Below are positions 27,757-28,372 of a stretch of DNA of 64,000 nt, piece by piece (positions within the stretch are counted from its first letter, which is position 1; every line of letters starts with the position of its first letter). The translations under genes were made by a program, and so were the position numbers. The notes under the pieces are model-generated. The model was not told where the DNA came from and ran no database searches. It saw only the letters and a list, made by a program, of their open reading frames with translations. The DNA comes from Podarcis muralis (taxonomy: Eukaryota). The stretch is from positions 24,800,001 through 24,864,000 of the forward strand of contig NC_135667.1 in assembly GCF_964188315.1 (NCBI RefSeq). Direction: 5' to 3'.

Positions 27757-28010
27757 AATTTAAGCAGCCACTGCCAGCAACCCACCACTCACACTTAGAG
27801 ACAAGTGATTTAGGAACTTTAAAAAAACCCCTCTGGTGCAAACCCCTAAGCAGAACTTTGGATCATAGTCATTATAAACATAACTGAATCTCAACCCTCA
27901 AAATACACATCTGATTCACAGCTGCTGAGCTGTAGAAGGCTCGTGAGAATTAAACCTTCTGGGTATAATTAGTAATGGGGCATTGATAAAGCTCATTGCT
28001 AACCATTTCA

Positions 28011-28219
28011 CCCCTTTGCTGAATAGCTTAGTTTCCAATATCTGCCCTTCAGTGATAGAGATTACATTGGTTGGAATGAGTCTCAATGACAAGGAGGGCA
28101 GTCAGAGAGCCACCACCAAAGGATTCTTTCATTTTGGCTTCTCTTACCAAAAGACAGGAGTGCAGGTAGAACACATCACCAGGGTAGGCTTCTTGGCAAG
28201 GTGGATGATGTAGCAATGG
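28011..28219 (-). pseudogene. ATP5F1A: Fragment of ATP synthase F1 alpha subunit coding sequence (probable processed-pseudogene relic)
   Basis: Minus strand reads [46 protein letters not shown], then after a 23-nt deletion [22 protein letters not shown]. This matches the conserved F1-alpha segment [29 protein letters not shown]...[44 protein letters not shown]. Confidence 0.93.
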
Positions 28220-28372
28220 AGGAGGCACAAGCCTTTTTGGACAAGTAATCACAAATAATCAAAGCATGTTTGCCAAGAAAGATTTCCTGGTTCAACTAAA
28301 TAAGAAAGAATGAGAAAGAAGTAGTATGGCAGCTTTCTTTCCCGGGCACCAAACAAAGGTCTGAGACACACA

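What the first reader, a model, noticed from the sequence alone, without database searches (positions are those of the whole stretch)
28002..28275. ATP synthase alpha (ATP5F1A) fragment captured just upstream of OR5
Seen: about 210 bp of F1-alpha coding sequence, antisense to OR5, sits in about 275 bp that replaces about 35-40 bp present in OR6 and OR7 (between ATTGCTA and AGAAAGATTTCCTG). There is no polyA or TSD. Four Arg codons changed as expected from CpG deamination (R>H, R>H, R>Q, R>C), and there is a 23-nt deletion. From memory, human ATP5F1A has an intron between DGQ and IFLET; here that junction is contiguous, which would mean an mRNA/cDNA template. Inference: an internal cDNA piece patched into a double-strand break after the OR5/OR6 duplication, about 125 nt from the acceptor. 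ATP5F1A is nuclear in vertebrates, so this is not a NUMT.
Basis: partly seen in the sequence, partly recalled or inferred. Interest (0 to 1): 0.75.

Follow-up and report, generated by a model that had tools for sequence, protein, structure and literature searches.

The report
Spliced ATP5F1A mRNA patch beside OR gene
A 263-base decayed copy of an internal, already spliced piece of the lizard's own ATP synthase alpha (ATP5F1A) messenger RNA sits just upstream of an olfactory receptor gene, most likely pasted into a broken chromosome long ago; it is a clean but ordinary example of a known kind of repair scar.

Summary
Window 28013-28275 (minus strand) is all ATP5F1A-derived: 263 bp, not about 210 of 275.

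Aligned to a close relative's gene, it holds the last 43 nt of one exon, the whole next exon (225 nt) and the first 32 nt of the third. The two introns (98 and 136 nt there) are absent. All seven vertebrate species examined have both introns. The template was therefore spliced mRNA, across two exon junctions.

Host RNA reads give the parental mRNA.

There is no poly(A), no target-site duplication, no inverted repeat and no other ATP5F1A piece in the window. About 18-21 bp of target were lost.

Single contigs from two studies of this species and from a second species span both junctions. The insert is real and older than that species split.

Best fit is a class-2 templated sequence insertion, or endonuclease-independent retro-insertion at a break. 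This is a new member of a known kind.

OR6 is a hybrid whose upstream is OR7-like, so its empty site dates nothing. The host's own gene was not seen directly. No function is indicated.

The parts
28013..28275 (-). Whole insert: 263 bp derived from about 300 nt of spliced ATP5F1A mRNA (codons for ..N-GKHALIIYDDLSKQ / AVAY..ITDGQ / IFLETELFYKG)
   Evidence: spanned by single DNA contigs (X1 rec1, X10 rec8, X18 rec14)
28233..28275 (-). Piece matching the last 43 nt of the upstream exon (exon N, ends ..TCC AAA CAG in relatives)
   Evidence: 37/43 identical to L010 positions 106-148, immediately followed in L010 by a GT intron
28042..28232 (-). Piece matching the whole 225-nt middle exon (exon N+1); 191 nt left after losses of 11 and 23 nt
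   Evidence: RNA reads of the parental mRNA lie on 28040-28216
28013..28041 (-). Piece matching the first 32 nt of the downstream exon (exon N+2); 29 nt left after a 3-nt loss in a CTTCTT repeat
   Evidence: host mRNA loose end before 28040
28078..28079 (-). Site of the 23-nt deletion (codons QAGDVSAY), bounded by TG..TG in the parental mRNA
   Evidence: loose ends at 28077/28078
28217..28232 (-). Region holding the 11-nt (1+10) loss in codons AVAYRQMSL
   Evidence: loose ends behind 28205/28216; alignment
28012..28017 (.). Left junction zone. The window reads CACCCCTTTGC, OR7 reads CACCCTTTACC, and the parental antisense reads ACCTTTGTAG. Microhomology is 1-5 nt and cannot be fixed without the true empty site.
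28275..28276 (.). Right junction, blunt or 1 nt. 28275 still matches the parental mRNA; from 28276 the sequence is AGAAAGATTTCC as in OR6/OR7.
   Evidence: joint to 28276
27860..28012 (+). Left flank homologous to OR6/OR7 upstream (about 16% diverged)
28276..28372 (+). Right flank homologous to OR6/OR7 upstream (9-11% diverged). It holds the position (28340-28346) that aligns with the OR6/OR7 ..CCTAG|G acceptor but reads CCCGGG in OR5.
28373..29326 (+). OR5 open reading frame, 317 aa, intact

Best explanation
About 300 nt from the middle of a mature, spliced ATP5F1A mRNA of the lizard lineage itself was copied into DNA. It was joined, in antisense orientation, into a chromosome break about 100 bp upstream of the OR5 coding exon, with loss of about 18-21 bp of target.

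Shown:
- the spliced-mRNA origin, across two exon junctions;
- the host-lineage source;
- the absence of poly(A), target-site duplication, inverted repeats and extra sequence;
- the small target loss;
- the presence of the insert in two species;
- neutral decay since insertion (29 fragment-only substitutions in 223 nt, 7 of CpG type, 20 GC>AT against 4 AT>GC, and three deletions at short repeats).

Inferred: the + strand carries the cDNA sense directly after a C/T-rich target end that can pair with AAAGG in the mRNA. The simplest path is that a free 3' end at a break (or nick) primed reverse transcription on the mRNA through 1-5 nt of microhomology, and that the cDNA end was then joined bluntly to the other break end. 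The enzyme could be a LINE reverse transcriptase acting without its usual endonuclease signature, or a repair polymerase.

The result is a class-2 templated sequence insertion, that is, an endonuclease-independent-type retro-insertion. Nothing suggests a function; it lies in what is probably the 5'-UTR intron or promoter-proximal region of OR5.
For: Protein identity of the fragment.

Parental mRNA from host RNA-seq: 242 read pairs were laid, all with first mate on + (which in most stranded libraries means RNA on the minus strand). 240 fit only partly, and their loose ends spell QAVAYRQMSLLLRR, QAGDVSAY and GQIFLETELFYKG.

Introns: GT-AG introns lie at both junctions in L001, L002, L003-6, L007-8, L009, L010 and L011. 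L010's exon is 97.8% identical to the host mRNA and has introns of 98 and 136 nt. The fragment aligns to the three exon pieces and to neither intron. 54 genomic ORF fragments in the protein collection read ..ITDGQ followed by V (GTn).

No hallmarks of other routes: no target-site duplication or terminal inverted repeats, and no other ATP5F1A piece in the 64 kb.

Empty paralogous site: a joint 28013->28276 with 21 letters between, and the OR6/OR7 strings.

Reality and age: contigs in X1, X10 (two studies) and X18 (another species, 22 differences in 622 nt, no gaps) span both junctions.

Decay spectrum.

Framework: class-2 TSIPs lack target-site duplications and poly(A), show microdeletion and microhomology, and include cDNAs with several spliced exons (PMC5110952). 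The criteria for non-classical L1 insertion are 3' truncation, no target-site duplication and no poly(A); 18 of 21 such loci had target deletions (PMC1920257).
Against: The host's own ATP5F1A gene was not seen as DNA. Its introns are therefore inferred from a close relative and six other vertebrates.

The true pre-insertion sequence of OR5 is unknown; paralogues stand in for it. Microhomology (1-5 nt) and target loss (18-21 bp) are therefore approximate.

The target reads ..CTTT/A.., which loosely resembles a LINE endonuclease site, so an endonuclease-made nick cannot be excluded.

The fragment's divergence (11-13%) is higher than the per-lineage divergence of its flanks from OR6/OR7 (about 7-8%). 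This could mean an older, already decayed donor copy rather than fresh mRNA. CpG loss and the GC>AT bias may also explain the excess.
Confidence: 0.78

Rival explanations
1. A DNA-level copy. The 263 bp were copied as filler DNA, or by templated repair or micro-duplication, from an older and already decayed ATP5F1A processed pseudogene elsewhere in the genome, not from RNA at the time of insertion.
For: Fragment-only divergence of 13% (11% outside CpG) exceeds the roughly 7-8% per-lineage divergence of the flanks from OR6/OR7. Class-2 insertions can also use DNA donors (PMC5110952).
Against: In three DNA runs the depth over the insert equals the single local contig, so no second copy at 80% or more was laid. 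CpG decay and the strong GC>AT bias (20 against 4) can raise the rate of a GC-rich insert in AT-rich surroundings.
Confidence: 0.1
2. A classical LINE-mediated processed pseudogene, primed on the poly(A) tail with a target-site duplication, that later lost its 3' part, poly(A) and duplication through deletions.
For: The sequence is intronless. Earlier scan notes report processed pseudogenes in this genome (s1-179099, not checked here). The target ..CTTT/A.. is loosely endonuclease-like.
Against: Flanks align with the paralogues right up to both junctions, with only 18-21 bp missing. Removing several hundred nt of 3' cDNA together with the poly(A) and the duplication, yet stopping within a few bases of the original target, needs an unlikely coincidence. 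PMC1920257 makes the same argument. There is no A-rich remnant at either end.
Confidence: 0.07
3. A genomic (unspliced) copy of ATP5F1A exons, capture by a DNA transposon or Helitron, a bacterial or organellar atpA, or an assembly chimera.
Against: - Both introns are missing.
- There are no terminal inverted repeats, no target-site duplication, no transposon sequence and only a single copy.
- The best matches are vertebrate mitochondrial F1 alpha, the stretch is 86.5% identical in DNA to the host mRNA, and it shares the lineage-specific Lys.
- Independent contigs from three studies and two species span both junctions.
Confidence: 0.02

Closest known systems
Class 2 templated sequence insertions / TSIPs (Onozawa & Aplan 2016, PMC5110952)
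   Same: A short patch templated from a distant gene. No target-site duplication, no poly(A) tail or signal, a microdeletion of target, and short or no microhomology. cDNAs with spliced exons are among the known templates. Germline and heritable.
   Different: Described in human cells and genomes. This one is an old insertion in lizards, shared by at least two species and carried by all three runs examined. It has decayed by about 13% and has three later (or synthesis-time) internal deletions.
Endonuclease-independent (non-classical) LINE-1 insertion at breaks (Sen et al. 2007, PMC1920257; Morrish et al. 2002, cited there)
   Same: 3'-truncated, no poly(A), no target-site duplication, target-site deletion, and microhomology-assisted attachment of RNA to a free DNA end.
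   Different: The inserted sequence is a cellular mRNA, not a LINE. The reverse transcriptase involved is unknown. The target (..CTTT/A..) does not clearly deviate from an endonuclease-type site.
Classical processed pseudogene (LINE-mediated retrocopy)
   Same: Intronless copy of a highly expressed housekeeping mRNA, decaying neutrally with CpG loss and frameshifts.
   Different: Lacks the mRNA 3' end, poly(A) and target-site duplication. It is an internal 300-nt piece, about 18% of the coding sequence.
Capture of cDNA or organellar DNA at double-strand breaks in yeast, and RNA-templated repair by polymerase theta (from my own knowledge: Teng et al. 1996; Moore & Haber 1996; Storici et al. 2007, the last cited in PMC5110952; Chandramouly et al. 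2021)
   Same: A break sealed with a reverse-transcribed or RNA-templated filler by end joining.
   Different: Those are experimental systems. Here only the fossil product is seen, and the enzyme cannot be told from it.

Membership tests
Class 2 templated sequence insertion | Insert templated from a distant locus | tested here: met
   ATP5F1A coding sequence, 86.5% identical to the host mRNA. No ATP5F1A gene or other piece lies in the 64-kb window.
Class 2 templated sequence insertion | No target-site duplication, no poly(A) tract or signal | tested here: met
   the ATP5F1A homology ends at 28013 and 28275 and abuts OR-paralogous sequence directly.
Class 2 templated sequence insertion | End-joining features at the junctions (microdeletion, microhomology or blunt join) | tested here: met
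   18-21 bp of paralogous target are missing; 1-5 nt of microhomology on the left; blunt or 1 nt on the right. Paralogues were used as proxy for the empty site.
Class 2 templated sequence insertion | RNA intermediate (where claimed): spliced exons | tested here: met
   Two exon junctions are contiguous. Introns are present at both in seven vertebrate species, including a close relative. The host gene itself was not seen.
Classical processed pseudogene (target-primed reverse transcription) | 3' end of the mRNA with poly(A) tail | tested here: not met
   The fragment ends at codon ..YKG, residue about 362 of 510. There is no A-run.
Classical processed pseudogene (target-primed reverse transcription) | Target-site duplication | tested here: not met
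   no direct repeat flanks the insert; there is a target loss instead.
Endonuclease-independent LINE insertion (NCLI) | 3' truncation, no target-site duplication, no poly(A) | tested here: met
   As above. Criteria taken from PMC1920257.
Endonuclease-independent LINE insertion (NCLI) | Clear deviation of the target from the endonuclease consensus TTTT/A | tested here: inconclusive
   The OR7 proxy reads CCCTTT/ACC and the OR6 proxy reads CCCGTC/ACC. The true OR5 pre-insertion sequence is unknown.
Endonuclease-independent LINE insertion (NCLI) | Inserted sequence is a LINE | tested here: not met
   The insert is cellular mRNA only.
NUMT (nuclear copy of mitochondrial DNA) | Source is the mitochondrial genome | tested here: not met
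   The source gene has spliceosomal GT-AG introns in vertebrate genomic contigs, so it is nuclear.
Transposon-captured gene fragment (Pack-type or Helitron) | Terminal repeats or transposon ends, target-site duplication, usually several copies | tested here: not met
   (depth of one contig over the insert in three runs).

The most novel reading that the evidence does not exclude
The patch was synthesised directly on ATP5F1A mRNA by a host repair polymerase of the polymerase-theta type, doing RNA-templated end joining in the germ line without any LINE reverse transcriptase. On this reading the three internal deletions at short repeats (TG..TG, CTTCTT) and part of the excess divergence are copying errors made during that repair, not later decay. 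The scar would then be a natural vertebrate fossil of RNA-templated break repair.
Probability: 0.15. Interest if true: 0.55.

Novelty: new member of a known kind. Interest (0 to 1): 0.3.

Why it matters
This is a well-documented natural example, outside mammals, of a break sealed with an internal piece of spliced cellular mRNA. It has two exon junctions, read-level support for both junctions, the parental mRNA recovered from the same species, and presence in a second species.

Such cases help estimate how often RNA-derived filler enters vertebrate germ lines without the LINE hallmarks. They can also serve as homoplasy-free phylogenetic markers among lacertid lizards.

It does not reveal a new mechanism or a new gene, and nothing suggests it changes OR5 or ATP synthase function.

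Tried and rejected
1. Exon borders of the host gene from DNA contigs laid at 80% likeness. This gave no information on host introns or on other retrocopies.

2. The host's exon in the protein collection. I ran two word searches. The second used a two-row profile built so that a Lys variant would score as well as Asn. No KMKDSF variant appeared among the 205 proteins returned.

3. Transposon capture, target-site duplication and inverted repeats: only short chance repeats were found. A 10-nt inverted match across the right junction (28190-28199 and 28270-28279) exists only because of three later substitutions in the fragment, so I dismissed it.

4. The idea that the 23-nt gap reflects an intron or alternative splice site, because some animal taxa have an intron after VIETQ. 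Rejected: the tetrapod-type genes, including the close relative L010, have no intron there, and the host mRNA reads carry the 23 nt.

5. MAFFT of the five OR upstream regions misplaced the insertion gap. I redid the junctions by eye, by pairwise alignment and from the read joints.

6. Human ATP5F1A was deliberately not consulted. ORF fragments of the NDAF type (P0023, P0031, P0036, P0039, P0051, P0056) might be human, so I neither fetched nor compared them.

7. I did not use the large representative-protein search, because the protein's identity was not in doubt.

In scripts the three exon pieces of relatives were laid side by side only to compare columns with the read-derived host mRNA.

Full report
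WHAT IS THERE

The window is a tandem cluster of olfactory receptor (OR) genes. Earlier notes of this scan call the genome a wall lizard; I did not verify the species name.

Just upstream of the OR5 reading frame (28373-29326, + strand), the minus strand of 28012-28274 translates in three shifted frames. The pieces are [15 protein letters not shown], [20 protein letters not shown]..[13 protein letters not shown] and [22 protein letters not shown]. The middle piece matches rat and bovine mitochondrial F1-ATPase alpha, mature residues 284-337, at E 4e-17. The last piece matches residues 337-362 at E 6e-5. The first piece is too short to score but aligns at the DNA level. A search with all reading frames of a vertebrate ATP5F1A genomic contig found no other ATP5F1A piece in the 64 kb.

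IS IT REAL, AND WHO HAS IT

Public data were laid on 27770-28570. Single contigs span the whole insert and both junctions:
- two runs of the same species from different studies (X1 record 1: 27770-28555, 2 differences; X10 record 8: 27770-28479, 2 differences);
- one run of a second species (X18 record 14: 27770-28391, 22 differences, no gaps).

The insert is therefore not an assembly artefact. It looks fixed in the few genomes examined, and it predates the split of the two species (3.5% pairwise divergence here). The joints that skip the insert belong to paralogous contigs 15% or more diverged. One of them carries exactly the OR7 filler (21 letters) between 28013 and 28276.

THE PARENTAL mRNA

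In a bulk RNA-seq run of the same species (X23), 242 read pairs lay on 28040-28216. All were less than 95% alike, and all had the first mate on +. In most stranded libraries that means RNA on the minus strand, which is the ATP5F1A sense. 240 of the pairs fitted only partly. These are reads of the real ATP5F1A mRNA.

Their consistent differences and loose ends let me write 260 nt of the host mRNA. It encodes [86 protein letters not shown].

Against this mRNA the fragment shows:
- 193 identities and 30 substitutions (86.5%);
- deletions of 1+10 nt (in AVAYRQMSL), 23 nt (QAGDVSAY, bounded by TG..TG) and 3 nt (one unit of CTTCTT, the Phe of QIFLET).

Host and fragment share a Lys in AAKMK(D/E)SF. 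Every other vertebrate fragment returned by the searches has Asn or Ser there. The source was therefore this lineage's own gene. No read matched the fragment itself at 95% or more, so it is not detectably expressed in that sample.

SPLICED OR GENOMIC?

The protein word search returned many short ORFs called on animal genomic contigs. These read ..Q|AVAYRQ...ITDGQ|V.., that is, one exon flanked by intron read-through. 54 of them have V (GTn) right after ITDGQ.

I fetched contigs for seven different species (L001, L002, L003-6, L007-8, L009, L010, L011). All have canonical GT-AG introns at both places:
- after ..TCC AAR CAG (LSKQ) and before GCT GTN GCC (AVA);
- after GAY GGN CAG (DGQ) and before ATY TTC (IF).

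None is human: they are NDSF or NDNF types, and I left possible human contigs untouched.

L010 is from a close relative of the host. Its middle exon is 97.8% identical to the host mRNA, and its next exon starts with the same 32 nt. Its introns are 98 and 136 nt long.

The window fragment aligns to L010 as follows:
- the last 43 nt of L010's upstream exon (28275->28233);
- its entire 225-nt middle exon (28232->28042);
- the first 32 nt of its downstream exon (28041->28013);
- nothing in either intron.

So about 300 nt of mature mRNA, crossing two exon junctions, were the template. The host's own gene was not seen as DNA, and that step remains an inference from the close relative.

JUNCTIONS

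The flanks are homologous to the regions upstream of OR6 and OR7 right up to the insert.

On the right, 28275 still matches the mRNA. From 28276 the sequence is AGAAAGATTTCC, as in OR6 and OR7, so the join is blunt or has 1 nt of overlap.

On the left, the window reads CACCCCTTTGC, OR7 reads CACCCTTTACC, OR6 reads CGCCCGTCACC, and the parental antisense strand reads ACCTTTGTAG. Depending on what OR5 looked like before the event, the overlap is 1 to 5 nt and the target loss is 18 to 21 bp.

There is no poly(A), no A-rich remnant, no target-site duplication, no terminal inverted repeat and no extra sequence.

The + strand carries the cDNA sense directly after a C/T-rich target end that can pair with AAAGG of the mRNA. 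This is what priming of reverse transcription from a free 3' end would give. That reading is an inference.

AGE AND THE OR DUPLICATIONS

A three-way comparison of fragment, host mRNA and L010 gives 29 changes unique to the fragment in 223 aligned nt, 1 unique to the host and 3 unique to L010. Of the 29, 7 are CpG-type, and 20 are GC>AT against 4 AT>GC. This is the expected relaxation of a GC-rich coding piece in AT-rich DNA. At two of these sites (28019, 28085) the second species still has the parental base.

The fragment lineage has thus accumulated about 13% change (11% outside CpG). That is several times the 1.7% per lineage separating the two species.

A sliding comparison of the three repeat units and the informative sites show the following:
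- OR6 resembles OR5 only from about 28395-28411 onward (CDS and at least 2.9 kb of 3' flank, 2-7% divergence).
- Upstream of that point OR6 is OR7-like (2-13% over more than 3 kb).
- OR5's own upstream is homologous to both only for about 260 bp, and is 9-16% diverged.

OR6 is thus a hybrid, as expected from an unequal crossover between OR5-type and OR7-type copies near the start codon. That recent event would not have copied the insert even if it was already there. The absence of the insert from OR7, OR8 and OR9 still makes it an insertion in the OR5 upstream lineage.

The fragment's divergence is somewhat higher than the roughly 7-8% per-lineage divergence of its flanks. CpG loss and compositional relaxation may explain the excess. 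So might an older donor copy, or error-prone synthesis. I cannot decide among these.

MECHANISM AND COMPARISON WITH WHAT IS KNOWN

The combination seen here is: a spliced internal mRNA piece, no poly(A), no target-site duplication, a small target deletion, and short or no microhomology.

That is the published definition of class-2 templated sequence insertions. Their templates include cDNAs with several spliced exons, and they are interpreted as reverse-transcribed patches used to repair breaks by end joining (PMC5110952).

It also meets three of the four criteria used for endonuclease-independent L1 insertions: 3' truncation, no target-site duplication and no poly(A). 18 of 21 such loci had target deletions (PMC1920257). 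Here, however, the cargo is cellular mRNA and the target is not clearly unlike an endonuclease site.

It fails the defining features of a classical processed pseudogene (poly(A), target-site duplication, 3' end). It also fails those of a NUMT and of transposon capture.

VERDICT

The cDNA-patch interpretation is supported and strengthened. The timing claim is corrected. The finding is a new member of a known kind, with no sign of function, and of modest interest (0.3).

Noticed in passing
window 28395-28411 (OR5 coordinates); units 25200-31300, 31400-37500, 37600-43700: OR6 is a hybrid copy. Its CDS and at least 2.9 kb of 3' flank are OR5-like (2-7% divergence), while more than 3 kb of its upstream is OR7-like (2-13%). 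The switch lies about 25-40 nt into the reading frame, as expected from an unequal crossover between neighbouring paralogues.
   Followed up: partly
window 28340-28346: Where OR6 and OR7 read ..CCTAG|G (the likely 3' splice acceptor of the coding exon), OR5 reads CCCGGG although its ORF is intact. This was already noted by the scan (s1-176069). The ATP5F1A insert ends about 70 nt upstream of this position. No olfactory RNA was available to see how OR5 is spliced.
   Followed up: partly
window 28092: The window has A here. The contigs of all three DNA runs, and the parental mRNA, have G. This is a private allele of the assembled individual or an assembly error.
   Followed up: no
host ATP5F1A mRNA (read-derived), codon aligned to window 28116-28118: The host ATP synthase alpha has Lys in AAKMKDSF. 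Every other vertebrate fragment returned, including the close relative L010, has Asn (or Ser). This is a lineage-specific replacement in a very conserved protein, and the fragment shares it.
   Followed up: partly
proteins P0010, P0022, P0043, P0049, P0054, P0061, P0062 and others: In some animal taxa the ATP5F1A exon ends after VIETQ (an intron there) instead of running on to ITDGQ. Intron positions in this gene therefore differ between animal groups. The organisms were not identified.
   Followed up: no
window 27700-27757: A (TTC)n microsatellite of about 58 nt lies 255 nt upstream of the insert.
   Followed up: no
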